Part shown: piece after piece, positions 2,439-63,008 of the stretch
How the letters are laid out: each line of letters starts with the position of its first letter
How positions within the stretch are numbered: the stretch's first letter is position 1
Origin: Zootoca vivipara
Taxonomy: Eukaryota
Length of the DNA stretch: 64,000 bases
Reading direction: 5' to 3'
Assembly: GCF_963506605.1 (NCBI RefSeq)
Contig: NC_083288.1
Span: 43,028,001-43,092,000 of the forward strand
The notes under the pieces: model-generated
Database searches by the model: none
What the model saw: only the letters and a program-made list of their open reading frames with translations
What the model was told of the DNA's origin: nothing
Translations under genes and position numbers: made by a program

Positions 2439-5400
2439 ATGTGGGGACAGGGGAATTTAGGCAGAAGAGGAATTATTTCATGCAAGATAGTTGGATTTGT
2501 CCTATTGCTACCAGTGCTTCTACTTCAGGGGATGTGCAAGATTCCTAACACCTGGAGCACATGCAGTCCCCTACCTTTTCTTCACAAGTATTACCAGCCA
2601 GGAGACCTCATCGTTGCTGGTATTATGTCTCAGATCTCCATATTATTCAACCCAATAGAGTTCGATAAATGTCCTTCTAATGACCTCTTTGATGACATTG
2701 TGTAAGATTTGTTTTGTAAAAACCTCTGGTGCCATATGTTGTTATATTAATTTTCTCTAGGAGTGCCAGGCCCATAGTTCAGTGTTAGATCCAGTGAATG
2801 AGAGGACATATTCCTTTGCCCAATAGTTGCATCATCCCTGTAGCTAAACCATATTAATCATCATCTGTTATCCTTTTAGTTGTGACAGGCATAAATCTAA
2901 TATCGGCTTAAGGAGTTTCAGGACTTTTGTTGTTGTTGTTTAGTCGTTTAGTCGTGTCCGACTCTTTGTGACCCCCTGGACCATAGCACGCCAGGCACTC
3001 CTGTCTTGCACTGCCTCCCGCAGTTTGGTCAAACATGTTCGTAGCTTTGAGAACACTGTCCAACCGTCTCGTCCTCTGTCGTCCCCTTCTCCTAGTGCCC
3101 TCAATCTTTCCCAACATCAGGGTCTTTTCCAAGGATCCTTCTCTTAGTTTCAGGACTGCAATACCTCAAAACTGCCAGGCCCCATATGAACTAACCCAGA
3201 CCATGCAATCATCACCTGAGGCCTTTCTTTGTGTGCCTCCTTGACAAGAGGTTCAGGGCCTTTTTCTGCAGTGGCTCCCCATTTGTAGAATACTCTGCTG
3301 AAAAAGGCTCACCTGGTGCCTTTGTTACATTTCTTTAGGTGCCTTATGTATTTTTGTGTTTTTATATTGTAAACTACCCTGTGATCCTTGGATGAACACA
3401 TGTATAGAAATTTAATTTAAAAAATAACTAGATTTAAACACAATGGTTTAGAGCCGGAACCTTTGCATGTTAATATTCCTCCAGATTTACCTGAATTGAG
3501 ATTGATCAGTATGATAGTATTGGTTCAGCTGAGGTGTGGCAATTGTCCCATGCAGAAGGAAATCACTGTGTTATAGCATGTAACTATTATTTCAGGGTTA
3601 TGACACAGCTCTACCAACATATTCTGGCATTAGTATTTGCTGTAAAAGAGATCAATGCAGATGTCCAAATCTTACCCAACCTCACCCTGGGCTTCCACAT
3701 CTACAACAGCCATTTTAGTCAAAGCTGGACCTATCGTGCTGCCTTGGAACTCCTCTCTACGTACAGCAGATTCATCCCCAACTACAAGTGTGACACCCAG
3801 AATTATCTAGCAGCAGTCATTGGAGGTCCGAACTCTGAGGTTTGTCTTCATATGGCAAATATACTGAGCAACTACAAGATTCCACAGGTAACATTCTCTC
3901 AGAGGTGTCTCCTGATAGTAAATTACCCAGACCATTCGGTCTTTTTTTCAGGCCAAAGGATGGAACTTTGCAAGTGCCGATGATCAGATGTCCCTTCGCA
4001 AATGTTACTGTGTTGATCCTTTGTCCGTTCTTTTTCATTTGTTTCTCCCCTTGTTGCTTAATATGTAACGTTATTAACTGCCTTGGAAACAAATGATGAT
4101 GAATTTGATAAATATATTAATACAAATAATTGAAATAAGCTGGCTGAGGGGATACAGGAAGGTGTCCTTCAGATGTTATTGAAATCCAACTTTCATCAGC
4201 CCCAGCCAGCAAGGGCAATGTGCTCATAGATTATGGGAATACTTATCCTACAATGGAATATGGTGGAAGCCCTGTTATGCCAGTGCAATGTATGACATGA
4301 CACTACCATGAAAGGTAACTGAGAATAATTTCTTGAGTAGATTGCCACAACCCTCGACCAGAATATATACTATGTGCTACTACAATTTCACCGGTTATAA
4401 CTTTTTTCTACCTTTTTGTGGATTGCTCAGTGTACCTGTACCTTTGAATTATTTAAGTTTGAGGAAAAAGCAAGTTCCCATGTCAGCAACACTCCCTCAA
4501 AACAAAATCTGAAATCTAGATTGTAGTCAATACAAGTTAACATAGAAAAACACTGCATACTTAAATAAAATTTCTCATCTCCTCATTTCCTGTCATTAAT
4601 TTAGCTCGTATATGGTCCTACTCCAATGAGAAATATTAAAACTGAAGTCGCTTTCTATAACCAAATGTTCCCAAATATAGACCATCAATATGAAGGGATT
4701 CTGAAGTTACTGCTACACTTCAGATGGCTATGGACTGGTGTGGTGATTGTGAATGATGAGAATGGAGAGAGATTTCTACAGAGTGTGGTTCCAAAATTTA
4801 TTCTGAGAGGAATCTGCTTTGATTTCATAGGAAGATTTCCATCCATTTCTTATTCTAGTGGTATTACGGACTTGGTTGCAGATGGGCTCAAGACATTTAA
4901 TGTTGCCATGAGAAGTACTGCTAATGTGTTGATCATTCATGGGGAAATTGATTCCATGACACTTTTGAGAATGTCTCCTGATATTTCAGAATATGAAGAT
5001 ATACCAATAAAGGCTACAGGTAAAGTTTGGGTCATGACGGTTCAGATGGATTTCACATCACTTCCCTTTCAGAGAGATCAGGACATAGACTTCCTCCATG
5101 GTTCCCTATCCTTCACCATTCACTCAAAGGAGGTCTTGGGATTCAAGGAATTTGTTCAGATGAGAAATCCCATTTTGGAAAAAGAAGATGGCTTTATGAG
5201 GATATACTGGGAAAAGGCATTTCAGTGTCATTTCGTTGACTCTGAGGAAAATATGCAGGATGGAGATATTTGCACTGGGGAGGAGAAGCTGGAGGCTCTT
5301 CCTGGCTCTATTTTTGAAACAAGCATGACTGGCCACAGCTATAGCATCTACAATGCAGTCTATGCTGTGGCACATGCCATGCATGTCATCCATTCATCTA

Positions 5401-8400
5401 AATTCAAGCACAGAGTGGATGAAGGGTGGCTGAAGCTTTGGAATCAACAGATGTGGAAGGTAATATCTGTTTGGTTTCTTGAATAATCAAAGTTACTTTC
5501 GAGCCGGTCTAATGTCAATATTGTCTGTTTAAGAAAAACAGGTGCCGGTAATTTCTGTTTAATTGCTCACAGGCATGGGCTCCACTCCATGTAAATAAGG
5601 CTCTGTTGGAAAGCATTTTGTGTGGTAGTTGTGTGGGAGTATGGTGGGAGATTTGGAGAGGTTTGAAGGGTCGGAATGTGGGTATGTAAAGTTGCTGGGA
5701 GAGAAAGTGTTTATCTTTAGTTTAAAGTCTCTTCCGAGTCAGTTTGTTTTTCTGTTAAAGAAAGCCAACCTTTTGTTTTTCTTCTGTATACTTTGAAGGT
5801 ATACTGCTAGTCAGGGGTTTCATGCTAGATTGGTCTTTAAACACTTGGTGGTGTATTTTAGCCAATTCAACTTCTGTTTGCGTATTTTGTTTTTCTATAA
5901 ACTCTGCGTGAAGCGTACTTTGTAGGGCCACTGGGAAACTGGGGTATATGATTTATGTTGGCACTCTTAATACCCAGTTTTCCCCAATATTATATCGCAA
6001 TAGTATCATGAGCACAATAATGCAGGAATGCTTACCATAGCCCTGGGAACATAGCTGCCAAGTTATCCCTTTTTTACAGGGATTTTCCCTTATGCTGAAT
6101 AGGCTTCCTCTCAAGAAAAGCAAAAACTTGGCAGCTATGCCTGGGAATAGTAATAGAAATAAAGAATCCAGAGTGTTTCTACCAAGGGTGGTTAGCATCT
6201 AAAGACATGTGACATTGAAAACATACTGTAGCTCACTGTTGTGTGAATATGTTTTACATCTGCCAAGAGAAGCTGCTAGGGACCGCACTCAGGACTGTGA
6301 CTGACTCATACTGAATGGGATTAGGTCTTTCTCACTAATAGGAGATTACACCAGAGGTTTTTTTTCTCTCTCTCTCTCTCTCTGTCATTGCTCTTAATGA
6401 AAAGAGCTTATTAAAAAAAAACCGTTAGTGAAATTAAATGCCCATTTGTATGTAGAGAAAGAGAATATACAGGAGTTGATTGTTCCACATTCACTAATTT
6501 AAGGCCATGAGAAGATCCTGCTGGACCAGGACATTGGCCCATCTAGTCCAGCATCCTTCTTCATCAAAAGGAGATGATGGTGATGTAGTGCTCAATGACT
6601 TCTATTACATCCATTACTGGTCTTTATGAATCTTTTGAAGGGCCCATTGCTCACATCCCTCAAGTAGGAAAGTTAATCATCAACCTGTTATATTTACTTA
6701 TGAAATACCCTTCTTTTCCCATCTTTCCCCCTGCCTAATTTAGCTTAGCTGCTTGGTGAGAAATAGCTTCTTTAATAATAGTGCTGGGGAAAAAGTTTAT
6801 TTCAACCAAAATGACCATTTTGCCAGTTTCCAAGAAGTCCAGAAATAAACAGTAAATTGCAAGAAGTCAGGCCATTTTGGCAGTCTTCAAGAAGTGTCAT
6901 GGAAATACTTCTGTCTCTAGTCCTAAGGCAGGGATGGGGAACCTTCAGCCCTCCAGATGTTTCTGAACTGCAACACCCATACTCCAAGCAAGCATAGCCA
7001 ATACCTGTAGGTCCCGCGGCCTACAACTACAAAGTCTACCTAGAAGTCTATGTGGTTGTACATGCTTTGCATTCCATGCATTCATATAGACTCAAAGGCA
7101 AAATGACAGTGGATGAAGAAATACATTTCAGAATGAGCGGTTGTAGACGGTAATGTCCCGAGCATGCTAAAAGTGGAGTAGAAATGGTGATGGATCAGTC
7201 CAAAGGCTTCCCAAGGCAGCCAACTTGATACATGTAGGAAGTGCTCAATCAGGACATTATGGCAATAGGCCACTCCCAACAGTCTGGTGTTCAGAGGCAC
7301 AATGCCCCTTTTTCTGGAGCAAGTATATAGTCATTGTGGCTTATAGCCATATATATATCTAATTTCGTCCATGACTTTGTCTAATCTCCACTGCTCACCA
7401 GATGCAAAGGAATAAAGAGAGAATCTAGATTCTCTGGGAAGTCCAAAAGGTGATAATGTTAAGCATGGAGCAGGATTTTTTCCTGCTTCTGCCTTCCACC
7501 ACATCACTGTTATAAATGTACTAGTGGCTATACCATTCTGACCTGTTCAGTGGCTGCCCAGTCATTTCCTTCATTAGTACTACTGTTACATTTTATTATT
7601 GTAGTTTATTACTGTATCTGTTTATCGTATGTATCTCTCAATGTTCCTGCAATAAGCTCAAGGTGGCCTATAGTCCTCTTCCTCCATTCATATCCATTCT
7701 TCCTTGGTATAAAGCTTTTAAACAAATTCAGTAATCGAGTGTGAATGATCACCAGCCTTTTGTATATCCATATGAATTGGCTGTCTTTTATTTTCTTTCT
7801 TTTTCTACTCATTTTCCTGGAAAAAAAAACCCCAGCTCAACCACTTTGTTAAAAGCATCTCATTTAATAATAGTGGTGGGGAAAAAGTTTCCTTCAACCG
7901 AAATGGAGAGTTAGAGTCTGGATTTGATATTATGAACTGGGTTACATTTCCAAACCAGTCCTTTCGGAGAGTGAAAGTTGGAAAGATCGACCCCATGGCT
8001 CCCCAAGAAGAAGCGTTCAGCATTAGTGAAGAAGCCATTGTGTGGCCCAGCTGGTTTAACCAGGTGAGATAAATTCATATTTTGTAGCTTATCCATCACT
8101 TCTGCAATGATTTACACTTCAGATACTGACCTAGCTCTGTGCTATGTTCATCCATGTGCTTAATGTAGGAGTCAGGGCATGGCTGTAGAGCTCTTCCATG
8201 TTTTGCCAATTAAGTAACACTCATTAAATGCACTATTGCACTGCTACCACCAAATTTGCCACCTGGGAAAAAAGTAAAACTTTATAAATTTACAGGTGGC
8301 CATCTTCATGTAGGGCAAGGCAGCATAAGGATTCCTTCTATCACAATGGGGCTTGCTTGTTTCCTTTCCCTACCCAAATCTGTGAAATATGACTCTCCCT

Positions 8401-10484
8401 TCCCTTGGCCCACATCAGTGAAGTAGGCAAGGGTGTCTGTTTGCCTGGGTAACCCAGGAGCTCGACACACACCACCCAGGTTTGGTACTGCTAATGCAGC
8501 GGTTCAACTTTCCCCCCAGAGATGTATTACATTGGATGATAATAACAACAACAGTTGCCTCCATCTGTGGAGACAGAGCAAAGCCATCATGGCAAGTAGC
8601 CATTGATTGCCCCTTCCTATTTGTCTCTTGCCTCTTCCACCATAAAATGAGATAGTTCAGCAAGTTAACAGAATATAATACACTATATTGCAAAATAGAA
8701 AACATTATCCTCTTACATTTTTGGACAGGCACAACCCCTTTCTCTTTGTAATGCCAATTGTCCTTTGGGTTATCAGAAAACAAAGAAGGAAGGGAAACCA
8801 TTTTGCTGCTATGATTGCATTACATGCCCGGAAGGGAAGATTTCCAACCAGACAGGTAAGAGAGAGGATGTATACAGCCTTTCAAATATACTGACATTAA
8901 GATGTTAAGACTCTCACTTCCCTTCCGGGGTTCAGTTGTTCAGGAAATTCAGGAAAGTTGTTCAGAATTCAGTGAAGGTTGTGGTTCCTGATATGAGGAT
9001 ATATCCTGATATATTCAATAATATCAGTCCAAGCCATAGACATCTGGTAATTATGTACACCAAAAAGAAGAATAAATGAAATGAATCACCACTCAGATGA
9101 AGGAGGTATCATAAGCTGAAGGAAACTGAAACTTTCAGAAATATGAAAGAACATCAGGGGAAAGCTAACGGTGCAATAGCCTCCCTCTCTTAAAAACAAG
9201 ACCCAAGAACCATCTTTCATAATTCAGAGAAGTGCTAAAACTGAAACACAACTGTGTTCCAGTTGACATATTAGTCTGGGAAGTTCAAATCATGTTGGGA
9301 TGTTAAAAAATGTGAACAAGTAAAATCTGCTAGAATCGTGACCGTAAGTGACAACATTGAGCTTCAGGAGCTGAGTTGGGTCCTAAGATCTAGGGGGTGG
9401 GGGGGTGGGACATTAACCATTCCTGAATATGGCATTTTGCTAATAATATAATTACATGAGAAGTGTGGCCGATTATTTTTCAGATATCAAGCTGGCAGCC
9501 CTTATTTCAGGTTTTGTTGTTTTCATTTTGATCAATTTCGTATTATGCGTGTAGTTGTGCTCCTACAGCTTTTCTTTTTCAGACATGGATGAATGCTTTC
9601 AGTGCCCACCAGATCATTACCCAAACATGGAAAAGGATTCATGCTTGCCAAAGGACATACATTTCTTGTCTTATGGTGAACCACTGGGGATCTCTTTGAC
9701 CTGTTTTGCTCTTTCCTTATCCTTCCTTACAGCTTTGGTGCTTCCGATTTTCATTAAGCACCGAGACACTCCCATAGTCAAAGCCAACAACCGCAACCTC
9801 TCCTACACTCTCCTCATCTCCCTCTTGCTTTCTTTCCTTTGTGCTTTGCTATTCATCGGTCAACCTGAGAAAGTGACATGTCTCCTTCGACAAACAGCTT
9901 TTGGCATCATCTTTTCCGTGGCTGTTTCTTGTGTGCTGGCCAAGACAATCATTGTGGTCCTTGCTTTCATGGTCACCAAACCAGGATCTGACATGAGGAA
10001 ATGGGTGGGGAAACAACAGGCCATTTCCATTGTTCTTTCCTGTTCCTTGATTCAAGCTGCTCTTTGTACTGTGTGGCTGGCAACTTCTCCCCCATTCCCA
10101 GATTTAGACATGCACTCAATGAGTAAAGAAATTATTCTGGAATGTAATGAAGGGTCAGTCACCATGTTCTACTGTGTCTTGGGGTTTATGGGCTTGCTGG
10201 CCATTGTCAGCTTCTCTGTAGCCTTCCTAGCCAGGAAGTTACCTGACAGTTTTAATGAAGCCAAGTTTATTACCTTCAGCATGCTGGTATTTTGCAGTGT
10301 GTGGCTGTCCTTTGTTCCAACATATTTAAGCACAAAAGGAAAATATATGGTGGCTGTGGAGATCTTCTCCATCTTGGCCTCCAGTGCTGGTTTACTAGGC
10401 TGTATATTTTCCCCAAAATGTTATATTATTGTAATGAAGCCAGAGCTGAACAGCAAGGAGCAGTTAAGAAGACGAAATCAGTGA
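2439..10484 (+). CDS. Vomeronasal type-2 receptor (V2R, class C GPCR), gene 1, ~888 aa, 6 exons
   Basis: Exons 2439-2701, 3596-3887, 4605-5459, 7836-8063, 8729-8855, 9583-10484 (263/292/855/228/127/902 nt), all GT-AG and frame-compatible. Signal peptide; Venus-flytrap motifs ([42 protein letters not shown]); Cys-rich CCYDC..CPEG; 7TM with TPIVKANN and [15 protein letters not shown]. Confidence 0.93.
2926..3145 (-). mobile_element. Bov-B (RTE) LINE 3' fragment
   Basis: [21 protein letters not shown], (CAA)n tail, 12-bp TSD AGTTTCAGGACT (2914-2925 / 3146-3157); empty site in gene 2 at ~13560. Confidence 0.92.
5468..6002. mobile_element. Solo-LTR-like insertion 8 nt into intron 3 of gene 1
   Basis: TG...GCAATA termini, imperfect 5-bp TSD ATATC/GTATC; genes 2 and 3 show the empty site GGTAATATCATGAGC. 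Confidence 0.65.
6744..6813 (+). pseudogene. Fossil 5' part of a gene-3-type V2R exon 4 in intron 3 of gene 1
   Basis: Reads [23 protein letters not shown] versus gene 3 exon 4 [23 protein letters not shown]. Acceptor TTTAG and upstream intron match 26400-26558; the rest of the exon and its donor are deleted. Confidence 0.88.
7018..7149 (+). pseudogene. Fossil 3' end of a V2R exon 3 from another paralog, in intron 3 of gene 1
   Basis: Reads [25 protein letters not shown].., homologous to [16 protein letters not shown]. Frameshift and stop near the end, followed by donor GTAATG. Confidence 0.8.
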
Positions 10485-13077
10485 AGCATCTAAAATTCTA
10501 TGGCCCTGGTCCATCTTAATTTGAATCTACGCAAAGGGATTTAAGCCAGCCACAACTGATTAGTTCAACTGGATTGCAGTTTAGATTACAGTTTCTCCCT
10601 TTATTCCCTCATTAGGCAGTACATATACATCGCAACATATGGATTGAATAGAGGAACCATCCTATGGTAATATAAACTCCCTACCCGAAGTCTGCCAAGC
10701 AAACAAGAAATGGGAGCCAAAAGCTTTCTTTCCTAGGTCTGACAAATGTAGTGGCATAATTATCTGCCACCTTGAGTGGATATGAAGATACCCCTCCTTA
10801 GGAGCTATCCTATGTTTATTCATTATTTTTTCTCCACATCAGACAGCCAAACAACATATAGCAAACACAAGAATGTAAGCTTTCCCGTTCCATTTTGAAT
10901 GTTACAGCATTGCCATTTATTTCCTGAATGCAACAGTACAAACAATAAATCAAAGTGATACAGAGCCCAGGATTTGTGGGAGGTTTATTTTGTCTGCCTA
11001 CATGCAAATGGGCCGTTTCGTTTGACTAGTTGCTCTTTGGAGAGCAAAAGCTCTGAACTCCAGAAAACTCCTGCCCCAACACTTTGAGTTGTATCCGACT
11101 GCTTCATCCAATGAGTGCAAGCATTTTTGCTTGTACAATGGATTTTCTCCCATCTCCTCACCCTGTGTGGGCCTCATACTTTACCAATCTGCTCCAGAGT
11201 GTCAGGGGAGGGGGAACCTAGAACAGATTTAGAGTTCAGATGGGGGAGGGGAAATCAAACCTTTTATAAAAGGAAATGAGAAAAAGGTTCGGGAGGAGCC
11301 TTCCAGCTGCCTGTCACATGTGGGGTCAGAGGCAAAAGTGTGAGCAGCAACAAATGTCAGTTTTGCGTTTGTACACTAGTACCTGCACATACTCACAAGT
11401 CAAGTAAGGGGAATTGTCGGAGTTCAAGGACACATTCCAGTGAGGCGAAATATATCCAAGTGTGGAGCTGGCTAGTAAGGGGTTTCACCTGGCGAAAATT
11501 CCAAATATCAGCATAATATTCAGCTCCCAGATCTGGAATTCCCAAGCCCTGTTCCCAAGCTAGAAAGGTCTGCACTCAGCAACCTGTCTAGCTCTACTGA
11601 TGAGTGCATTTCATCTAGCAGAACTTTTCATCTTGTGTTTTTCCCCAGAACGGCTTGTTTGTAGGTATAGCTTGGGTTTAATGATCCGGCTTGTATGATG
11701 CTGTATCTACACCATCTATTACAGCCACCATATAGTCAGCAGGGTGTTGTGGTTAGATCAGTGGTTGTTTCTACTGTTTCCAAGAGGTGTGATACTATTA
11801 ATGTAACCTGGCTATATTTATTACACTAAAATGTTGCTTTTTCTATGTTGTTATATTTGCTATTCTGTTGTTCTTTTATTCTGAAATTGTTCTTGACACT
11901 GTTGATTTTGAGATGTGTTCCTGTATTCTTGTAGTTAGCTACTTGGAGTAAGATTCTTTCAGTGGAAGTGCAGTGTACAAATAAAATTATGAATGAATGA
12001 TTGAACTGTACTTTCAGTCTTTCCAGGACAGATGTTAAGCTAACCAGTCTATAATTCCTAGGGCCTTAAGGTCCATTGAAGCCAAACTCATCTTAAGTGA
12101 ACTTGGAAGTTTCTGCAGTACAGCCCTGGGCAGGGAATGAATAGTCCCTGGCAGACATTATAAGATGGGCAACATCTGGAATGGGAAGAGGTGGACAGTC
12201 AGCTGGGATGACGAGTTGCTCCTTGCTCTCTGGGTATCTCATTAAAAATCAAGAGAAGTCCTACAGAGAAGATGCAGGAGCAAAAAGTTAATAAAGGACC
12301 CACAATGGGGATGAGGGAAGTCCATGGGGATCTATGGAATACCTTTTTGGGGGGAGGGGGTTGCTTGAGGATTCTTTGTAGATTTGAAAGTTTGAAAATA
12401 AATAGTTTTATTTAAAAAACACAACAAAAGCAAATGAACAGAAGTCAGGAGAAACTTAGGGCGGGTTTTCAACGACATTTAACTCCCTCCACACGCATCA
12501 TTTTTTCAAGGGGAATTCTAACATCATCATATTAATCTGTCAGTTTGTGAATACCAATGAGACCTGCACAGACCAAGCTGAGTAACATCACTTTCAAGTG
12601 TCATGCATCTAGCATAGTATTTGCTCAATGGTCCCTGGTTGTACAAAGCTGTGAATATAAATACCATCTGGTCCTAACTATGATAGTTACATCCACCTAG
12701 TTTCCTGCTACATTATCTGGGACTCTTAATTCCCATAACACAATCAAATGATCACACGAGCCGGATGATTGCAGCCGTCACATCTAAGTGCCTGTAAATC
12801 TCAATGATATTATTATCCTCTCTGTAATTATGAAATTAAGCATGGAAGCTTCGTTTCCACATATCAAGGGAGCTGCAAATATGAGCTGTATTATTAACAA
12901 TGAAGATAGGAGGGTGCTGTGAATATCGCCTGTACAATTCCAAGGTGTAACAAGAGATAGCCAGGGCTTGGTCAGGCTAATAACAGATGCTTTACACTGC
13001 ACAATCTGACTCACAAATCAATGTAGTGTTGACTTAAGTTAGGGTACCCAACACAGCAAAGGACTTACTGAAAGAGA

Positions 13078-16000
13078 ATGTTGGGACAGGGGAATTTAGG
13101 TAGAAGAGGAATTATTTCATGCAAGATAGTTGGATTTGTCCTATTGCTATCAGTGGTTCTACTTCAGGGGATGTGCAAGATTCCTAATACCTGGAGCACA
13201 TGCAGTCCCCTTCCTTTTCTTCACAAGTATTACCAGCCAGGAGACCTCATCGTTGCTGGTATTATGTCTCAGATCTCTATATTATTCAACCCAATAGACT
13301 TCGATAAATGTCCTTCTAATGACCTCTTTGATGACATTGTGTAAGATTTGTTTTGTAAAAACCTCTGGTGCCATATATTTGTTATATTAATTTTCTCTAG
13401 GAGTGTCAGGCCCATAGTTCAGTGTTAGATCCAGTGAATGAGAAAAGGACATATTCCTTTGCCCAATAATTGTATCATCCCTGTAGCTAAACCATATAGT
13501 CATCATCTGTTATCTTTTTAGTTGTGTCAGGCATGAATCTAATATCGGCTTAAGGGGTTTCAGGACTGCAATACCTCAAAACTGCCAGGCCCCATATGAA
13601 CTACCCCAGACCAGATATTTCTTTAGGTGCCTTATGTATTTTTGTATTTTTATGTTGTAAAAAGCCCTGGGATCCTTGGGTGAACACTAGTATAGAAACA
13701 CGAGTATAGAAAATAGATTTATAGACAGTGGGAAGAAATGTAAGAAACAGTGTTTAGAGCTGGAACATGTGCATGTTAATATTCCTCCAGATTTACCTGA
13801 ATTGAGATTGATCAGTATGATAGTATTGGTTCAGCTGAGGTGTAGCAATTGTCTTATGCAGAAGGAAATCAACGTGTTACAGCATGTAACTATCCTTTCA
13901 GGGTTATGACACAGCTCTACCAACATATCCTGGCATTAGTATTTGCTGTAAAAGAGATCAATGCAAATCTCCAAATCTTACCCAACCTCACCCTGGGCTT
14001 CCACACCTACAACAGCCATTTTAGTGCAAGCTGGACTTATCGTGCTGCTTTGGAACTCCTCTCTACGTACAGCAGATTCATCCCCAACTACAAGTGTGAC
14101 ACCCAGAATTATCTAGCAGCAGTCATTGGAGGTCCGAACTCTAAAGTCTGTCTTCATATGGCAAATATACTGAGCAACTACAAGATTCCACAGGTAACAT
14201 TCTCTCAGAGCACATCTCCTGATAGAAAAGTACCCAGACCATTCGGTCTTCTTTTCAGGCAAAAGGATGGTACTTTGCAAGTGTCGATGATCAGATGTCC
14301 CTTCGCAACTGTTACTGTGTTGATCCTTTGTCCGTTCTTTTTCATTTGCTTTCTCCCCTTGTTGCTTAATATGGAACGTTATTAACTGCCTTGAAAACAA
14401 ATGATGAGGAGCTTGATAAATATATTAATACAAATAATTGAAATAAGCTGGCTGAGGGGGTACAGAAAGGTGTCCTTCAGATGTTATTGAAATCCAACTT
14501 TCATCAGCCCCAGCCAGCAAGGGCAATGTGCTCATAGATTATGGGGAGTTCTTATCCTACAACGGAATATGGTGGAAGCCCTGTTATGCCAGTGCAATGT
14601 ATGACATGACACTACCATGAAAGGTAACTGAGAATAATTTCTTGACTAGATTGCCACAACCCTCGACCAGAATATATACTATGTGCTACTACAATTTCAC
14701 TGGTGAGAACATTTTTCTACCTTTAGCAGATTGCTCAGTGTATCTGTACCTTTGAATTATTTAAGTTTGAGGAAAAAGCAACAAGCTCCCATGTCAGCAA
14801 CACTTTCTCAAAACAAAATCTGAAATCTATATTGTATTTTAACTGTAGTCAATACAAGTTAACATAGAAAAACACTGCATAATTAAATAAAATTTCTCAT
14901 CTCCTCATTTCCTGTCTTTAATTTAGCTCATCTATGGTCCCGTTCCAATGAGAAATATTAAAACTGAAGTCGCTTTCTATAACCAAATGTTCCCAAATAT
15001 AGACCATCAATATGAAGGGATTCTGAAGTTACTGCTACACTTCAGATGGCTATGGACTGGTGTGGTGATTGTGAATGATGAGAATGGAGAGAGGTTTCTA
15101 CAGAGTGTGGTTCCAAAATTTATTCTGAGAGGAATCTGCTTTGATTTCATAGGAAGATTTCCATCCATTTCTTATACTAATGGTATTACGGACTTGGTTG
15201 CAGATGGGCTCAAGACATTTAATGTTGCCATGAGAAGTACTGCTAATGTGTTGATCATTCATGGGGAAATTGATTCAATGACACTTTTGAGAATGTCTCC
15301 TGATATTTCAGAATATGAAGATATACCAATAAAGGCTACAGGTAAAGTTTGGGTCATGACGATTCAGATGGATTTCACATCACTTCCCTTTCAGAGAGAT
15401 CAGGACATAGACTTCCTCCATGGTTCTCTATCCTTCACCATTCACTCAAAGGAAGTCTTGGGATTCAAGGAATTCGTTCAGATGAGAAATCCCATTTTGG
15501 AAAAAGAAGATGGCTTTATGAGGCTATATTGGGAAAAGGCATTTCAGTGTCATTTCGTTGACCCTGAGGAAGATATGCAGGATGGAGATATTTGCACTGG
15601 GGAGGAGAAGCTGGAGGCTCTTCCTGGCTCTATTTTTGAAACAAGCATGACTGGCCATAGCTATAGCATCTACAATGCCGTCTATGCTGTGGCACATGCC
15701 ATGAATGCCATGCATTCATCTAAATTCAAGCGCAGAGTGAATGAAGGGCGGCTGAAGCTTTGGAATCAACAGATGTGGAAGGTAATATCATGAGCACAAG
15801 AATGCAGGAATGCTCACAATAGCCCTGGGAATAGTAGTAGAAATAAAGAATCCAGAGGGTTTGAAAAGTTTCTGTTTCTACCAAGGGTGGTTAGCATCTA
15901 AAGACCAAATTACATGTGACATTGAAAACACACTGTAGCTCGCTGTTGTGTGAAACTGTTCTACATCTGCCAAGAGAGGGGCCTCACTCTAGAGACCTCA

Positions 16001-19000
16001 CTCAGGACTCTGACTGACTCATACTGAATGCTGCTTGGTGAGAAATAGCTTCTTTAATAGTAGTGCTGGGGAATAAGTTTATTTCAACCAAATGATTCAA
16101 CCATTTTTCCATTCTTCAAGAAGTGTCATGAAAATACATCTGTCTCTAGTCCTAAGGCAGGGATGGGGAACCTTCAACCCTCCACATGTTTCTGAACTGC
16201 AACACCCATATTCCCAGCAAGCATAGCCAATACCTGTAGGTCCCACAGCCTACAACTACAATGTCTACCTAGAAGTCTATGTGGTTGCACATGCTTTGCA
16301 GGCCATGCATCCATCTAGACTCAAAGGCAGAATGACAGTGGATGAAGACAACATTTCAGAATGAGCAGTTGTGGACGGTAATGTCCCGAGCATGCTAAAA
16401 GTGGAGTAGAAATGGTGATGGATCAGTCCAAAGGTTTCCTAAGGCAACCAACTTGATAGCTGTGGGAAGTACTCAATCAGGGCATTATGGCAATAGGCCA
16501 CTCCCAACAGTCTGGTGTTCAGAGGCACGGTGCCCCTTTTTTCCTGGAGCAAGTACATAGTCATTGTGGCTAACAGCCATAAATATCCAAATTCTTCCAT
16601 GACTTGGCCTAATCTCCACTGCTCACCAGATGCAAAGGAATAAAGAGAGAATCTAGATTCTCTGGAAAGTCCAAAAGGTGATAATGATAAGTATGGAGAA
16701 GTCCCCCCCCCCCTGCTTCTGTCTTCCACCACGTCATGGTCATAAATGTAGTAGTGGTTATGACATTCTGACCTGTTCCACTGCTGCCCAGCCACTTCCT
16801 TCATTAGTACCACTGTTACATTTTATTATTGTAGTTTATTACTGTATCTGTTTATTGTTGTATGTATCTCTCAACGTTCCTGCAATAAGCTCAAGGTGGC
16901 CTATAGGGCTCTTCTTCTCTCCGTATCCATTCTTCCTTGGTATAAAACTTTTAAACAGTTCAGTAATCAAGTGCGAATGATCACCAGCCTTTTGTATATC
17001 CTTATGAATTGGCTTTCTTTTATTTTCTTTCTTTTTCTACTCATTTTCCTAAAAAAAACTATAACAGCTCAACCACTTTGTTAAAAGCATCTCATTTAAT
17101 AATAGTGGTGGGGGAAAAGTTTCCTTCAACCGAAATGGAGAGTTAGAGTCTGGATTTGATATTATAAACTGGGTTACATTTCCAAACCAGTCCTTTCGGA
17201 GAGTGAAAGTTGGAAAGATCGACCCCATGGCTCCCCAAGAAGAAGCATTCAGCATTAGTGAAGAAGTCATTGTGTGGCCACGCAGGTTTAACCAGGTGAG
17301 AGTAATTCATATTTTATAGCCTATCCACCACTTCTATAATGAGTCACAGTTCAGATACTGACCTAGCTCTGTGCTATGTTCATCCATGTGCTTAATGTAG
17401 GAGTGAGGGCATGGCTGTAGAGATCTTCCATGTTTTGCCAATTAAGCGATATTCATTAAACCCACTATTGAACTACTACTGCCAAATTTGCCATTTGAAA
17501 AAAGTAAAACTTTATAAATTTACAGAGGGTCATATTCATGTAGGGGAAGGCAGCATAAGGATTGCTTCGATCACAATGGGGCCTGCTTGTTTCCTTTCCC
17601 TACCCAAATTTGTGAAATATGGTTCTCCCCTTGGACCACATAAGTGAGGTAGGCAAGGGTGTCTGTTTGACTGGGTAACCCAGGAGCTAGACACATACTG
17701 CCCAGGTTTGGGACTGCTAATGCAGCAGTTCAACTTCTCCCCCATGCTATGGCTCAAACTATGTTTCAGACCGATGGGTTTTGCCCCCCCCTGATTCTGA
17801 GGGATAATTTTAAATCTCCATGGGAAAGGGAAGTGGTAGAGGAAGTGCAAAAGTGCCGCCTGTCCTCCCTTTATATTGAGTCCATGACGTACAGCCGCGC
17901 TAAAGCGATGATCACTCAGAGATTGGGGGATACTGCCAGACAGGAGGACATAGCCCGTGTGAAATCTGGGATGTTTTTAGGGGAGCAGGTGTATCGGTCT
18001 GCACCAGCCCGTTACCTGGCGGATATCCACTGCGTGGAATACCGCAGACTACGTACTGTGGCTAGACTGAATGTCCTTGATTCAGCGGTTTTGAGGGGAA
18101 GATTTGGAGGAGTCCCATACGGTCAGAGAATGTGCCATTGTGCCTTGGGTGAGGTAGAATCCACAGAACACATTCTACTGAGTTGTCCCTTTTATAATGA
18201 TTTAAGGCAATATCTTATAGATCCGTATTTATCTCAGTTTAGTTCCCGACCAAGAGAACGGCAGGCAGCATATTTGCTAAACAAGCCCACTGGGAAAATA
18301 ACTTTCTCAGTGGCTAAATTCCTCTTCCTGGCGCTCAAGTGTCGGAAACGTATAATCAAATGTCTTGATGTGGGTTATCTGTAGGAGGTTTAGTAGCACG
18401 GTCTAACCCATTTATGTATCCCTCTGATGCCTTCGGTTTTATATTTTTATATTTTTATGTATCCCTCTGATGCCTTCAGTTTTATATGTTTATCTTTGTA
18501 TTGAGAATTTTTTTTTTGTTTCTGACTATCGGTCGAATAAAGTATATTGATTGATTGACTTCTCCCCCAAAGGTGTATTACATTGGATGATAAGAACAAC
18601 AACAGTTGCCTCCATCTGTGGAGACAGAGCAAAAGCCATCATGGCAAGTAGCCATTGATTGCCCCTTCCTATTTGTCTCTTGCCTCTTCCACCATAAAAG
18701 GAGATAGTTCAGCAAGTTAACAGAATATAATACACTATATTGCAAAATAGAAAACATTATCCTCTTACATTTTTGGACAGGCACAACCCCTTTCTCTTTG
18801 TAATGCCAATTGTCCTTTGGGTTATCAGAAAACAAAGAAGGAAGGGAAACCATTTTGCTGCTATGATTGCATTACATGTCCGGAAGGGAAGATTTCCAAC
18901 CAGACAGGTAAGAGAAATCATGTATAGAGCCTTTCAAATATACTGACACTAAGGTATTCAGACACTCACTTCCCTTCTGGGGTTCAATTATTCAGAAAAT

Positions 19001-19334
19001 TCAGGAAAGTTGTTCAGAATTCAGTGAAGGTTGTGGTTCCTGATATGAGGATATAGCCTGATATTTTGAATAATATCAGTCCAAGCCATTGACAGCTGGT
19101 AATTATGTACACCAAAAAAAGAAGAAGAAGAAATGAAATGAAAGGAATTACCACTCAGACGAAGGAGGTATCATAAGCTGGAAAAAAAAAAACCAGAAAC
19201 CTTCACAAATATGAAAGAACTTCAGGGGAAAGCTAACAGTGCAACAGCCTCCCTCTCTTAAAAACAAGACCCAAAAACCATGTTTCACAATTCAGAGAAG
19301 CGCTAAAACTGAAATACAACTGTGCTCCAGTCGA

Positions 19335-19394
<60 letters not shown>

Positions 19395-20587
19395 TGTGCT
19401 CCAGGCGACATATTGGTCTGAAAAGTTCAAATCGTGTTGGGATGTTAAAAAATGTGAACAAGTAATGACCGTTAGTGACAACATTGAGCTTCAGAAGCTG
19501 AGTTAGGTCCTGAGATCTGGGGGTGGGTGGGACATTAACCATTCCTGAATATGGCATTTTCCTAATAATATAATTACATGAGAAGTGTGTCAACCTGGCA
19601 GCCCTTATTTCAGGTTTTGTTGTTTTCATTTTGATCAATTTAGTATTATGCATATATTGGTGCTCCTACAGCTTTTCTTTTTCAGACATGGATGAATGCT
19701 TTCAGTGCCCACCAGATCATTACCCTACTGTGGAAAAGGATTCATGCGTGCCAAAGGACATACATTTCTTGTCTTATGGAGAACCACTGGGGATCTCCTT
19801 GGCCTGCTTTGCTCTTTCTTTGTCCTTCCTTACAGCTTTGGTGCTTTGGATTTTCATAAGGCACCGGGACACTCCCATAGTCAAGGCCAACAACCGCAAC
19901 CTCTCCTACACTCTCCTCATCTCGCTCTTGCTTTCTTTCCTTTGTGCTTTGCTATTCATCGGTCGACCTGAGAAAGTGACATGTCTCCTTCGACAAACAG
20001 CTTTTGGCATCATCTTTTCAATGGCTGTTTCTTGTGTGTTGGCCAAGACAGTCATTGTGGTCCTTGCTTTCATGGTCACCAAACCAGGGTCCAGCATGAG
20101 GAAATGGGTGGGGAAACAACAGGCCACTTCCATTGTCCTTTCCTGTTCCTTGATTCAAGCTGCTATTTGTACTGTGTGGCTGGCAAATTCTCCCCCATTC
20201 CCAGCTTTAGACAATCACTCAATGAGTAAAGAAATTGTTCTGGAATGTAACGAAGGATCAGTCACCTTGTTCTACTGTGTCTTGGGCTTTATGGGCTTGC
20301 TGGCCATTGTCAGCTTCTCTGTAGCCTTCCTAGCTAGGAAGTTACCTGACAGTTTTAATGAAGCCAAGTTTATTACCTTCAGCATGCTGGTATTTTGCAG
20401 TGTTTGGCTGTCCTTTGTTCCAACATATTTAAGCACAAAAGGAAAATATATAGTGGCTGTGGAGATCTTCTCCATCTTGGCCTCCAGTGCTGGTTTACTA
20501 GGCTGTATATTTTCCCCAAAATGTTATATTATTGTAATGAAGCCAGAGCTGAACAGCAAGGAGCAGTTAAGAAGACGAAATCAGTGA
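13078..20587 (+). CDS. V2R gene 2, ~888 aa, 6 exons, close paralog of gene 1
   Basis: Exons 13078-13340, 13902-14193, 14927-15781, 17068-17295, 18781-18907, 19686-20587. Same exon sizes and motifs as gene 1; open frame. Confidence 0.93.
16030..16094 (+). pseudogene. Fossil exon-4 fragment in intron 3 of gene 2 (acceptor deleted)
   Basis: Copy of 6749-6813; about 430 nt upstream, including the acceptor, is missing relative to gene 1. Confidence 0.8.
16248..16377 (+). pseudogene. Fossil exon-3 3' end in intron 3 of gene 2
   Basis: [33 protein letters not shown] (frameshifted), then GTAATG donor. Confidence 0.82.
17745..18557 (+). mobile_element. 5'-truncated non-LTR retrotransposon, RTE-X-like
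   Basis: 211-aa ORF C-terminus with CxC..EH...CPFY..LR zinc knuckle, AATAAA, (ATTG)n tail, 12-bp TSD ACTTCTCCCCCA; empty site in gene 1 at ~8510. Confidence 0.8.
19338..19392. repeat. (TAT)n microsatellite flanked by a 19-bp direct repeat
   Basis: Direct reading; flanks ACTGTGCTCCAG[T/G]CGACAT at 19319-19337 and 19393-19411. Confidence 0.9.
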
Positions 20588-26000: not shown

Positions 26001-26858
26001 TAGCTCACTGTTGTGTGAATTCTACATCTGCCAAGAGAAGCTGCTAGGGATCTCAGCCAGGACTCTGACTGACTCATACTGAATGGGGTTAGGTATTTCA
26101 TTTCACTAATAGGGGATTACACCAGGAGTTTCCATTTTATTCCAAATGGCAGCTGCTTCAGAAGGATCTCTCTCTCTCTCTCTCTCTCTCTCATTGCTCT
26201 TCATGAAAATAACTCTATTCAATAATTAAAAAATACTTACAGAAATTGAATGCCCATATGTATGTAGAGAAAGAGAATACAGTATACAGGAAGTAATTGT
26301 TCTGCATTCACTTACTTAAGGACATAAGAATATCTTGCTGGACCAGGACATTGAAACATCTCGTCCAGCATCCTTTCGTCAAAAGGAGATAATGGTGATG
26401 TAGTGCTCAATGACTTCTATTACATCCATTACTGGTCTTTATGAATCTTTTGAAGGGCCCATTGCTCACATCCCTCAAGAAGGAAAGTTCACCATCAACA
26501 TGTTATATTTTCTTATGAAATATCCTTCTTTTCTCATCTTTCCCCCTGCCCAATTTAGCTCAACAGCTTGGTGAGAAATAGGTTCTTTAATAATAGTGCT
26601 GGGGAAAAAGTTTATTTCAACCAACATGGAGAACTAGAGGCTGCATTTGATATAATAAACTGGGTGACATTCCCAAACCAGTCCATTCTTAGAGTGAGAG
26701 TTGGAGGAGTAGACCCACGGGACCCCCTGGGCAAAGAGTTCACCATTCATGAGGATGCCATTGTGTGGCCCAGCAGGTTTAACCAGGTTTGACTCCAGAC
26801 ACATTTTTGCGGGCTTTATTCAAATGTCATTTTGCCAGTCTTCAAGAGGTGTCATGGA

Positions 26859-26897
<39 letters not shown>

Positions 26898-62790: not shown

Positions 62791-63008
62791 ATGGTACTAT
62801 TCATGGTCTCAATATTAGTGTTCCTGCCTTATATGATATGCAGTGTTCCTGTTGCCACATACACTGCTGACACTCCTCTTTCTATTATGCACAATTATTA
62901 TCATTCAGGAGATCTCATCATTGCTGGAATTATTTCTCAGATCTACATGACATTTGATTCAATGGATTTCAGAGGACATCCATCTGAGAAACTGATTGAT
63001 GATATCAT
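62791..63008 (+). CDS. V2R gene 6, exon 1 only (rest presumably beyond the window)
   Basis: Signal peptide followed by HNYYHSGDLIIAGIISQIY..DDIM. Phase-2 donor GTACGA at the position homologous to the other exon-1 donors. Confidence 0.8.

What the first reader, a model, noticed from the sequence alone, without database searches (positions are those of the whole stretch)
6003..10484. Genes 1 and 2 are chimeric V2Rs with the fusion scar preserved in intron 3
Seen: intron 3 follows gene 3's intron 3 up to a truncated gene-3-type exon 4 (6744-6813), then pieces of gene 3's intron 4 (matching ~26828-26860 and ~29385-29475). At ~7015 it switches abruptly into the 3' end of an exon 3 from a different V2R (7018-7149, donor intact), and that gene's intron 3 and exons 4-6 follow. 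Gene 2 carries the same scar (16030-16377). Exons 1-3 match gene 3 but exons 4-6 do not. Inference: a deletion or unequal crossover fused two V2R genes, the intervening exons decayed, and splicing from exon 3 to the foreign exon 4 (both phase 0) made an in-frame receptor with most of the ligand-binding domain from one parent and the Cys-rich/7TM part from another. The chimera then duplicated with both frames intact, so this looks like domain shuffling caught in the act.
Basis: partly seen in the sequence, partly recalled or inferred. Interest (0 to 1): 0.78.

Follow-up and report, generated by a model that had tools for sequence, protein, structure and literature searches.

The report
Old chimeric vomeronasal receptor genes, lizard
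Two neighbouring vomeronasal (V2R) receptor genes of the common lizard are hybrids, with the front half from one receptor lineage and the back half from another and leftovers of the fusion still lying in an intron; the hybrid is old, also occurs in wall and sand lizards, and is still kept intact.

Summary
The window is a Zootoca vivipara V2R array with five intact six-exon genes.

- **Two halves.** Genes 1 and 2 match gene 3 at 95-98% DNA identity in exons 1-3, but only 77-82% in exons 4-6.
- **Scar.** Their intron 3 holds gene-3-type intron 3, 70 bases of a gene-3-type exon 4, two pieces of gene 3's intron 4, then, after a junction at 7016-7025, the decayed last ~42 codons of a foreign exon 3 with its GT donor.
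- **Trees.** Exon-3 and exon-6 trees are strongly incongruent (AU p 1.6e-73 and 2.9e-7).
- **Donor type.** It exists intact in the same species (XP_034958615). NCBI already models gene 1 (XP_060137800) with the predicted exon 3-to-exon 4 join.

- **Not recent.** The same chimera is annotated in Podarcis and Lacerta. One Podarcis model contains the scar's exon-3 tail. The low 5' divergence from gene 3 fits concerted evolution.
- **Mechanism.** A tandem duplication with staggered breakpoints fits best, but the upstream parent lies outside the window.

No RNA evidence was obtained. First readers noted similar chimeras elsewhere in this genome, including 28 kb upstream and 9 kb downstream (unchecked). 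This is a clean new example of a known process.

The parts
2439..5459 (+). Gene 1, gene-3-type 5' half: exon 1 at 2439-2701, exon 2 at 3596-3887, exon 3 at 4605-5459 (ends in phase 0).
   Evidence: Open frames and AG/GT sites. 97.0-97.9% DNA identity to gene 3's exons 1-3. ANF_receptor domain in exons 2 and 3. Exon 3 is 100% identical to NCBI model P0130 = XP_060137800.1.
5460..6743 (+). First part of gene 1's intron 3, of gene-3 type. It carries two insertions that genes 2 and 3 lack (5468-6000 and 6050-6139).
   Evidence: 6001-6049 and 6140-6743 align to gene 3's intron 3 (25848-26558). The insertions appear as gaps in genes 2 and 3 and as skip joints in read contigs.
6744..6813 (+). Truncated pseudo-exon 4 of gene-3 type. 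The acceptor AG is kept; the 3' 158 bases and the donor are lost.
   Evidence: 65/70 identical to gene 3's exon 4 start (26559-26628), against 54/70 to gene 1's own exon 4. Translation seen.
6814..7015 (+). Leftovers of gene 3's intron 4: an unmatched or locally duplicated stretch at 6814-6872, a piece at 6873-6907, and a piece at 6921-7015 (part of a high-copy repeat).
   Evidence: 6873-6907 matches 26828-26862 at 94%; 6921-7015 matches 29380-29474 at 93.7%. Repeat nature.
7016..7025 (+). Fusion junction: gene 3's intron 4 (about 29474-29485) joined to the inside of the foreign exon 3. A possible 5-base microhomology (CCTAC) lies at 7020-7024.
   Evidence: Three-way view of genes 1, 2 and 3. 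The same junction in gene 2 lies at 16245-16254.
7025..7149 (+). Decayed 3' end (about 42 codons) of the donor (X-type) exon 3, with the GT donor at 7150-7151. It has lost one base and carries a stop in the last part.
   Evidence: Frames. Protein matches to exon-3 ends. An intact copy of this tail in P. muralis (P0132) matches the P. muralis X-type gene P0133 best, rank 1 of 130.
7150..10484 (+). Gene 1, X-type 3' half: donor's intron 3 (7150-7835), exon 4 (7836-8063), exon 5 (8729-8855), exon 6 (9583-10484, stop included).
   Evidence: for exons. No match of 7150-7833 to genes 3-5. NCD3G and 7tm_3 domains. Protein identity to the Zootoca X-type gene P0128 is 92/98/93% for exons 4/5/6, against 63/76/79% to gene 3.
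13078..20587 (+). Gene 2, second chimera. Exons at 13078-13340, 13902-14193, 14927-15781, 17068-17295, 18781-18907 and 19686-20587. Scar: pseudo-exon 4 at 16030-16092, intron-4 pieces at 16102-16136 and 16150-16244, junction at 16245-16254, exon-3 tail at 16254-16377.
   Evidence: The tail has lost two bases, a different frame break from gene 1.
23054..33375 (+). Gene 3, the intact gene-3-type parent. Exons at 23054-23316, 23961-24252, 24992-25846, 26559-26786, 29846-29972 and 32465-33375. The parental breakpoint lies in intron 4 at about 29474-29485.
   Evidence: 100% identical to P0180 = XP_060137279.1 over exons 3-6. Orthologs in L. agilis and P. muralis group with it for exon 6 (100/99).
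7025..16253 (+). One full repeat unit of the array (about 9.2 kb, junction to junction): X-type exon-3 tail, X exons 4-6, intergenic region, gene-3-type exons 1-3, part of exon 4 and part of intron 4. The next unit (from 16254) runs on without a break into the rest of gene 3.
   Evidence: Colinear self-alignments: 9251-12219 with 19393-22319 at 90.9%; 1-759 with 11289-12046 and with 21395-22150; 13617-16030 with 23694-26085.

Best explanation
Genes 1 and 2 are intact chimeric V2R (family-C GPCR) genes.

Structure (shown). Exons 1-3, most of the Venus-flytrap ligand-binding domain, come from the lineage of gene 3. Exon 4 (the last stretch of that domain), exon 5 (the Cys-rich domain) and exon 6 (the 7TM domain) come from another V2R lineage, here called X. 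X is represented intact in Zootoca by XP_034958615. The two lineages separated before lacertids split from the amphisbaenian Rhineura.

Mechanism (inferred). The ancestral order was X followed by gene 3. A tandem duplication copied a segment whose left breakpoint lay about 42 codons before the end of X's exon 3 and whose right breakpoint lay in gene 3's intron 4. This placed [gene-3 exons 1-4 plus part of intron 4] directly before [X exon-3 tail, intron 3, exons 4-6].

How the product stays in frame. About 200 bases of the gene-3-type sequence (26629-26827), including the 3' 158 bases of exon 4 and its donor, are missing from the chimera. Exon 3 (phase 0) therefore splices to X's exon 4 (phase 0). 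The two pseudo-exons stay in what is now intron 3.

Age. The fusion happened once, before Zootoca, Podarcis and Lacerta diverged.

Later history. The chimera multiplied in each lineage: at least 3 copies in Zootoca, and 8 distinct models in P. muralis (some may be isoforms, alleles or annotation versions). Because the repeat unit is offset from the gene borders, unequal crossover or conversion between units has kept the 5' halves of the chimeras and of gene 3 alike within each genus. Gene 3's 3' half stayed apart. Both halves of the chimeras are under purifying selection, so they most likely act as working vomeronasal receptors.
For: Shown:
- Exon identities switch between exon 3 and exon 4. 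Synonymous divergence between genes 1 and 3 is 0.048 in exons 1-3 and 0.61 in exons 4-5.
- The scar has duplicated, staggered homologous segments: a gene-3-type exon 4 fragment upstream of an X-type exon-3 tail.
- In the exon-3 tree, genes 1, 2 and 3 and P0131 form a clade (100/97). In the exon-6 tree, genes 1 and 2 sit in the X-type clade (100/97, 23 rows), while gene 3 groups with its L. agilis and P. muralis orthologs (100/99).
- AU tests reject the other half's grouping: p 1.6e-73 on exon 6 and 2.9e-7 on exon 3.
- Both parental types exist intact: gene 3 in the window, and P0128 in the same species.
- The intact copy of the scar tail in P0132 matches the P. muralis X-type gene P0133 best, rank 1 of 130; gene-3-type tails rank 12 to 57 and need a 2-residue gap.
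- NCBI model P0130 joins exon 3 to X-type exon 4 at residues 370/371, exactly as predicted.
- dN/dS between genes 1 and 2 is 0.34 (exons 1-3) and 0.29 (exons 4-6).

Single old origin:
- Chimeras of three genera form one exon-6 clade (98/91) that excludes the X parents of Zootoca and Podarcis.
- Holding the Zootoca chimeras together with the Zootoca X parent is rejected (p 4.4e-4).
- The Zootoca and Podarcis scar tails share a residue that differs from both X parents at 7 of 33 columns, against 1 column that groups by species.

Concerted evolution of the 5' half:
- Exon 3 groups by genus, with the Podarcis gene-3-type parent P0238 nested among the Podarcis chimeras.
- 'All chimeras form one clade' is rejected on exon 3 (p 0.0015).
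- Site patterns along the 5' unit are patchy: chi-square 119, 26 degrees of freedom, p 7e-14, with 0 of 5000 permutations reaching the observed value.

Tandem duplication:
- X-type exon 6, the intergenic region and gene-3-type exon 1 are contiguous three times, and the last unit continues into intact gene 3.

Not a misassembly:
- The junction occurs in two copies about 9% diverged.
- A contig of another run covers 6986-7175 with one difference.
Against: - No transcript evidence. The one RNA run laid (tissue unknown, about 6% of it read) gave zero depth on most of exons 3-6, and reads at 90-95% likeness on two exon-6 bins only. What supports the NCBI models is unknown.
- The X parent's position was not seen. 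Tandem duplication against deletion therefore rests on parsimony.
- Podarcis and Lacerta evidence is from predicted proteins only. Their breakpoints were not seen in DNA.
- The exon-3 tail is short and decayed. Its preference for X-type over gene-3-type is moderate: 23/36 against 17-21/34. The Zootoca X parent ranks only 11th of 130.
- Two of the four AU groups (second test, 50) were named after the trees were seen.
- The contig has only 30-40 letters left of the junction, because a repeat lies there.
- The left side of the junction is a repeat copy, so the exact breakpoint is uncertain within 7016-7025.
Confidence: 0.8

Rival explanations
1. Deletion model. A gene-3-like gene once lay upstream of an X-type gene. 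A deletion from its intron 4 to the middle of X's exon 3 fused them. The intact gene 3 downstream is a separate older duplicate.
For: It produces the same junction and the same leftovers. Nothing in the window excludes it.
Against: It needs an extra earlier duplication to place a gene-3-type gene on both sides of X. The seamless unit structure, with X 3' half, intergenic region and gene-3 5' half repeated and ending in intact gene 3, is what a single tandem duplication gives.
Confidence: 0.15
2. Recent or repeated origin. The chimera arose separately in each genus, recently in Zootoca. That would explain why exons 1-3 of genes 1 and 2 are only 2-5% from gene 3.
For: Exon 3 groups by genus. Synonymous divergence between genes 1 and 3 is only 0.048 in exons 1-3.
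Against: Exon 6 of the chimeras from three genera forms one clade that excludes each species' own X parent (98/91; AU p 4.4e-4). A Podarcis model holds the same exon-3 tail between gene-3-type exon 3 and X-type exon 4, sharing derived residues with the Zootoca scar at 7 of 33 columns. Genes 1 and 2 themselves differ by about 9% in the 3' half.
Confidence: 0.06
3. Plain gene conversion. An X-type gene had its 5' half overwritten by gene 3 (or gene 3's by the others) without any structural fusion.
For: Conversion or unequal exchange is active in the 5' half. Gene conversion has been reported for fish V2R-like OlfC genes (PMC6588630, passages read).
Against: Conversion swaps homologous positions. 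It cannot leave a gene-3-type exon 4 fragment and intron-4 pieces upstream of a second exon-3 end and a second exon 4.
Confidence: 0.02
4. Artefact: a misassembly or collapsed array, or gene models that wrongly join neighbouring genes.
For: Tandem arrays of about 93% similar units are hard to assemble. The Logan contigs laid are short.
Against: Two diverged copies carry the junction. Contigs of runs from other studies match at 99% or more, including 6986-7175, and gene-2-type variants appear as separate contigs. Protein models of three other species show the same combination.
Confidence: 0.02
5. The chimeras are structurally real but not working receptors: untranscribed, or mis-spliced through the pseudo-exons.
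For: No RNA support was found. The acceptor of pseudo-exon 4 and the donor of the exon-3 tail are intact, so aberrant splicing is possible.
Against: All exons are open in both copies after about 5-9% divergence, while the pseudo-exons have decayed. dN/dS is about 0.3 in both halves. The chimera is kept and multiplied in three genera.
Confidence: 0.12

Closest known systems
Chimeric genes formed at tandem-duplication or illegitimate-recombination breakpoints (Drosophila examples: PMC1463047 and PMC2211543, listing and abstract starts seen; Sdic family PMC7475035, listing and abstract start seen)
   Same: Two genes are joined by a staggered, non-homologous junction. The product is in frame, and leftovers of both parents lie at the junction. 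The new gene is later amplified in tandem.
   Different: Here both parents are members of one receptor family, so the product is a module swap within a conserved architecture rather than a new domain combination. It is old, shared by three lizard genera. Its 5' half keeps exchanging sequence with one parent.
Hybrid genes from unequal crossing over between tandem paralogs, such as CYP11B1/CYP11B2 (PMC8750845, abstract start seen); red/green opsin hybrids (recalled, no call)
   Same: The 5' part comes from one paralog and the 3' part from its neighbour. The cause is the tandem arrangement.
   Different: Those arise by homologous misalignment at equivalent positions and leave no scar. Here the original junction is non-homologous (an intron 4 joined to an exon 3) and left pseudo-exons. 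Homologous exchange seems to act only afterwards.
Gene conversion and concerted evolution in V2R/OlfC genes (PMC6588630, passages read; raised only as an untested possibility for squamate V2Rs in PMC3590772, passages read)
   Same: Paralogs within a species are more alike than orthologs, and identity is patchy.
   Different: Here homogenisation is limited to the 5' half, because only that half is shared between the chimeras and gene 3. It comes on top of a structural fusion.
Calcium-sensing receptor and other family-C GPCRs with solved structures (best match 8szh_A, E 3.6e-142)
   Same: Same domain order: Venus-flytrap domain, Cys-rich domain, 7TM. In that alignment the exon 3/4 border (P0130 residue 370/371) falls about 90 residues before the Cys-rich domain.
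   Different: V2Rs are a large, fast-evolving chemosensory branch. No structure or ligand is known for these genes.

Membership tests
Vomeronasal type-2 receptor (family-C GPCR) | N-terminal Venus-flytrap ligand-binding domain (Pfam ANF_receptor) | tested here: met
   Exon 2 E 1.9e-12 and exon 3 E 3.1e-17.
Vomeronasal type-2 receptor (family-C GPCR) | Cys-rich domain (NCD3G) followed by a family-3 7TM domain (7tm_3) | tested here: met
   Exon 5 NCD3G E 7.9e-15; exon 6 7tm_3 E 1.9e-90, covering 251/251 profile positions.
Vomeronasal type-2 receptor (family-C GPCR) | Closest relatives are annotated V2Rs; six coding exons with the 7TM domain in the last exon (the exon pattern is recalled as typical) | tested here: met
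   Nearly all of the 120 listed hits are named vomeronasal type-2 receptor-like, and all are family-3 GPCRs. Six-exon structure in all five genes.
Vomeronasal type-2 receptor (family-C GPCR) | Expression in vomeronasal sensory neurons | tested here: inconclusive
   One RNA run of unknown tissue gave no depth on most exon bins.
Chimeric gene born at a duplication or recombination breakpoint | The two parts have different closest relatives (incongruent trees) | tested here: met
   AU p 1.6e-73 and 2.9e-7.
Chimeric gene born at a duplication or recombination breakpoint | Both parental gene types exist intact | tested here: met
   Gene 3 in the window. X-type P0128 = XP_034958615.2 in the same species, with its own exons 1-3.
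Chimeric gene born at a duplication or recombination breakpoint | Non-homologous junction with remnants of both parents | tested here: met
   Pseudo-exon 4 (65/70 to gene 3), intron-4 pieces, then the exon-3 tail.
Chimeric gene born at a duplication or recombination breakpoint | For a tandem duplication: order is parent X, chimera(s), parent gene 3 | tested here: inconclusive
   Gene 3 lies directly downstream and the unit is seamless. The upstream side is outside the window and could not be fetched.
Chimeric gene born at a duplication or recombination breakpoint | Chimeric open reading frame maintained by selection | tested here: met
   No stops and canonical splice sites. dN/dS 0.34 and 0.29 between genes 1 and 2.
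Chimeric gene born at a duplication or recombination breakpoint | Chimeric transcript observed | tested here: inconclusive
   NCBI model XP_060137800 has the join, but its evidence is unknown. No RNA reads were found.
Gene-conversion tract as the sole cause | Exchange at homologous positions, with no duplicated segments | tested here: not met
   Second exon-3 end and second exon-4 start in intron 3.

The most novel reading that the evidence does not exclude
In lacertid V2R clusters the tandem repeat unit is out of register with the gene. The array therefore works as a module shuffler. Each unequal exchange re-pairs ligand-binding halves with Cys-rich/7TM halves, and the two halves of one gene evolve in concert with different neighbours.

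Support for recurrence:
- A second mosaic class (P0124 and its relatives) has X-like exon 6 but foreign exons 3-5.
- A Podarcis model turns the scar's exon-3 tail back into a coding exon.
- Several unchecked first-reader notes report chimeras elsewhere in this genome.

Together these suggest that shuffling is recurrent and is a real source of receptor diversity, and that it distorts whole-gene V2R phylogenies and repertoire counts.
Probability: 0.3. Interest if true: 0.7.

Novelty: new member of a known kind. Interest (0 to 1): 0.5.

Why it matters
V2R repertoires are usually analysed as whole genes or by the 7TM exon alone. This is a clean, datable case in which the ligand-binding and signalling halves of a V2R have different histories.

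- The hybrid has been kept under purifying selection and multiplied in at least three lizard genera.
- Its 5' half stays homogenised with one parent. Trees, orthology calls and birth-death estimates for squamate V2Rs can therefore be misled.
- The chimeras and their two intact parents form a natural domain-swap series. It could be used to ask which half sets ligand specificity and which sets trafficking, dimerisation or gene choice.

The process itself, a chimeric gene at a duplication breakpoint, is well known. In four literature searches and passages of three papers I found no description of it for V2Rs. Supplementary files, which were closed and not requested, may list these genes.

Tried and rejected
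- **RNA support.** One RNA run (X22, tissue unknown, about 6% read) gave no depth on most of exons 3-6. Reads lay on repeats and, at 90-95% likeness, on two exon-6 bins. This is uninformative and is not evidence of silence.
- **Related species B (X12).** It covers 28 of 30 bins at about 90-95% likeness and has contigs over 6666-6783 and 7125-7282. No listed contig bridges the junction, so the call does not show whether species B has the scar.
- **Fetching the loci.** The upstream parent and the other species' breakpoints were therefore not seen.
- **DNA match of the exon-3 tail within the window.** It is weak: 60-68% in global alignment and 73-76% locally. The assignment rests on protein comparisons.
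- **Gene conversion alone and misassembly.** Both were considered and rejected; see the rival explanations.
- **Tree sets.** 42 of the 304 fetched proteins were chosen by hand: all with high likeness to gene 1 or gene 3 exons, plus a few further lacertid paralogs and six Rhineura proteins as outgroups. P0130 and P0180 were left out as identical to genes 1 and 3. 33 of the 42 had at least 200 residues of exon 3 (38 rows with the five window genes). All 42 had exon 6 (47 rows).
- **Chi-square test.** It used 14 of the 18 windows, or 394 of 406 informative sites. Two windows had no sites and two had 4 and 8 sites; these were dropped.
- **Accession numbers.** Consecutive numbers for parent and chimera in L. 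agilis and P. muralis are only a weak hint of adjacency and were not used as evidence.
- **Divergence dates.** Dates for the lizard genera are recalled, not tested, and no date is claimed.

Full report
**What the window is.** The 64-kb window has one 128-base run of N. On the + strand it holds five complete V2R genes and the first exon of a sixth.
- Each of the five genes has six exons that are open in the expected phases, with AG/GT at every splice site.
- Translated one by one, gene 1's exons carry ANF_receptor (exons 2 and 3), NCD3G (exon 5) and 7tm_3 (exon 6).
- Gene 1's exons 3-6 are 100% identical to the NCBI model XP_060137800.1 of Zootoca vivipara (P0130). Gene 3's are 100% identical to XP_060137279.1 (P0180). 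The genome is therefore the common lizard's.

**Checking the observation.** Self-comparison shows three head-to-tail units.
- Genes 1, 2 and 3 are alike from about 2.4 kb upstream of the start codon through exon 3 and into intron 3. Exons 1-3 are 95.1-97.9% identical.
- From exon 4 on, genes 1 and 2 stay alike (95-99%). Against gene 3 they are only 76.8-82.5% identical, no closer than to genes 4 and 5 in exon 6.
- Between genes 1 and 3, synonymous divergence is 0.048 in exons 1-3 and 0.61 in exons 4-5.

Inside gene 1's intron 3 (5460-7835) the order of pieces is as follows.
- Gene-3-type intron 3, interrupted by two insertions private to gene 1.
- 70 bases of a gene-3-type exon 4 (6744-6813). 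These are 65/70 identical to gene 3, against 54/70 to gene 1's own exon 4.
- Two pieces of gene 3's intron 4: 6873-6907 and 6921-7015.
- A junction at 7016-7025.
- About 42 codons of an exon-3 end (7025-7149), followed by GT.
- An intron (7150-7835) with no likeness to genes 3-5, then exon 4.

Gene 2 has the same junction (16245-16254) and tail (16254-16377). It has also lost 431 bases of the gene-3-type intron. The tail is broken differently in the two copies: one base lost plus a stop in gene 1, two bases lost in gene 2. It therefore decayed after the copies separated.

**Is it real DNA?** Three lines of evidence say yes.
- The junction is present in two copies that differ by about 9% around it, which a misassembly would not produce.
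- Logan contigs of runs from two other studies of the same organism cover all 30 bins. One 190-base contig (6986-7175) has a single difference. Separate contigs carry gene 2's variants, seen as joints 6316-to-6748 and 6810-to-6872.
- The left flank of the junction is a high-copy repeat, so that contig has only 30-40 letters on that side.

**Are the two halves of different descent?** I searched gene 1's exon 6 alone. I then searched with two database proteins found that way. This gave 304 proteins, later 311. Per-exon identities sort the lacertid proteins into three classes.
- **Gene-3 type throughout:** Zootoca P0180, P. muralis P0238, and partial L. agilis P0020.
- **X type throughout:** Zootoca P0128 (XP_034958615.2), P. 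muralis P0133 and P0161.
- **Gene-3-type exons 1-3 with X-type exons 4-6:** Zootoca genes 1 and 2 and P0131; eight P. muralis models; P. raffonei P0154; partial L. agilis P0002.

The trees agree with this sorting.
- In the exon-3 tree (38 rows) genes 1, 2 and 3 and P0131 form a clade (100/97) inside a gene-3-type clade. The X-type exon 3s lie far away.
- In the exon-6 tree (47 rows) genes 1 and 2 lie in the X-type clade (100/97, 23 rows). Gene 3 groups with its orthologs (100/99).
- Each data set rejects the other's grouping: delta lnL 189, p-AU 1.6e-73, and delta lnL 279, p-AU 2.9e-7.
- Both parental lineages have Rhineura relatives in both trees, so they are old lineages.

**The donor.**
- The tail's translation matches the exon-3 ends of many V2Rs at the right place.
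- P. muralis model P0132 contains the tail in frame, between gene-3-type exon 3 and X-type exon 4.
- That 36-residue copy matches the P. muralis X-type gene P0133 best of 130 exon-3 ends (23/36). The Zootoca X-type gene ranks 11th. Gene-3-type ends rank 12th to 57th and need a two-residue gap.
- The preference is moderate, as expected for a short stretch that has drifted. It agrees with the tail's continuity with X-type intron 3 and exon 4.

**Age.** The chimera is not recent.
- Exon 6 of the chimeras from Zootoca, Lacerta and Podarcis forms one clade (98/91). That clade excludes the X-type parents of Zootoca and Podarcis.
- Forcing the Zootoca chimeras together with the Zootoca X parent costs 34 lnL units (p-AU 4.4e-4). 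This group was named after the tree was seen.
- At 7 of 33 comparable columns, the Zootoca and Podarcis scar tails share a residue that differs from both X parents. Only one column groups them by species.

Yet exon 3 groups by genus.
- The Podarcis gene-3-type parent P0238 is nested among the Podarcis chimeras.
- 'All chimeras form one clade' is rejected on exon 3 (p-AU 0.0015, also named afterwards).
- Along the 5' unit, the three Zootoca copies show strongly patchy site patterns. Overall counts are 191, 115 and 100 private sites for genes 3, 2 and 1. Heterogeneity across windows gives chi-square 119, p 7e-14, with 0 of 5000 permutations reaching it.

The simplest reading is one old fusion followed by continuing exchange between the 5' halves of the chimeras and gene 3 within each genus. 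That exchange could be unequal crossover or conversion.

**Mechanism.**
- The scar holds staggered duplicates: a gene-3-type exon 4 start lies upstream of a second exon-3 end. This excludes plain conversion and points to a non-homologous join of gene 3's intron 4 to the inside of X's exon 3. A five-base microhomology (CCTAC) may lie at the join.
- X-type exon 6, the intergenic region and gene-3-type exon 1 are contiguous three times, and the third unit runs on into intact gene 3. A single tandem duplication of an ancestral 'X then gene 3' pair explains this in one step.
- A deletion between a gene-3-like copy and X needs an extra duplication. I could not see the upstream side, so this step is inferred.
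- About 200 bases of gene-3-type sequence, including the rest of exon 4 and its donor (26629-26827), are missing from the chimera. That leaves exon 3 (855 bp, phase 0) to splice to X's exon 4 (228 bp, phase 0), as NCBI's model does at residues 370/371.
- In an alignment to the calcium-sensing receptor (E 3.6e-142), the border falls about 90 residues before the Cys-rich domain. The swap therefore cuts inside the ligand-binding domain, near its end.

**Function.**
- Both chimeras are open. Between them dN/dS is 0.34 (exons 1-3) and 0.29 (exons 4-6), while the pseudo-exons decayed. This argues for working genes.
- No transcript was seen. The only RNA run laid is of unknown tissue and gave essentially nothing on the exons.

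**Literature.**
- Four searches found no description of chimeric V2Rs.
- Brykczynska et al. 2013 (PMC3590772, passages read) mention conversion among squamate V2Rs only as an untested possibility.
- Policarpo et al. 2024 (PMC10869828, passages read) do not use the words chimera, recombination or conversion.
- Yang et al. 2019 (PMC6588630, passages read) report conversion among fish OlfC genes.
- Supplements were closed and may list these genes.
- Chimeric genes at duplication breakpoints are well known in other systems (listings and abstract starts only).

**Earlier notes of this scan.** Unchecked first-reader notes report similar V2R chimeras 28 kb upstream (s1-853084), 9 kb downstream (s1-851723) and on another piece (s1-855420). 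My own data show one further mosaic class. P0124 and its relatives have X-like exon 6 but different exons 3-5. This fits the upstream note but was not followed into DNA.

**Verdict.**
- It is a clean new example of a known process in a family where it had not been described. The genes themselves are already annotated.

Noticed in passing
no window coordinates (proteins P0124/P0311 Zootoca, P0125 L. agilis, P0003/P0005/P0123 P. raffonei, P0004 P. muralis): A second mosaic class. Exon 6 is 90-93% like gene 1 and lies inside the X-type clade. Exon 4 is only 74-78% and exon 5 79-83% alike. For the two members that entered the exon-3 tree (P0124, P0125), exon 3 lies in another clade. This suggests another module swap or conversion with a border between exons 5 and 6.
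   Followed up: partly
P0132 (P. muralis XP_028560545.1), residues before its exon 4: The model ends exon 3 in a shifted frame and then uses the scar's exon-3 tail as an extra in-frame coding exon. The scar may have been re-used in one Podarcis copy. The evidence behind the model is unknown.
   Followed up: partly
window 5468-6000 and 6050-6139: Two insertions in gene 1's intron 3 that genes 2 and 3 lack. The 90-base one has an inverted copy at 40248-40337 and extreme read depth. A contig of related species B skips 5463-6004.
   Followed up: partly
window 17734-18557: An 825-base insertion in gene 2's intron 4, relative to gene 1. A 237-codon open stretch at 17671-18381 overlaps it. It was not identified.
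   Followed up: no
window 26863-29379: Gene 3's intron 4 holds about 2.5 kb between the two pieces that lie close together in genes 1 and 2. It includes repeats found elsewhere in the window: 26859-27302, and 27341-27836 which matches 63819-63329. These are probably later insertions in gene 3.
   Followed up: no
window 62767-63060: First exon of a sixth V2R at the window's end.
   Followed up: no
window 37000-38540 and 30293-30747 / 38224-38678: Reverse-transcriptase-like open stretches in gene 4's intron 2. Also a 455-base repeat present in opposite orientation in gene 3's intron 5 and gene 4's intron 2.
   Followed up: no
accessions: The gene-3-type parent and a chimera have consecutive accession numbers in L. 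agilis (XP_033024136 and XP_033024137) and in P. muralis (XP_028560544 and XP_028560545). This is a weak hint that they are neighbours there too.
   Followed up: no
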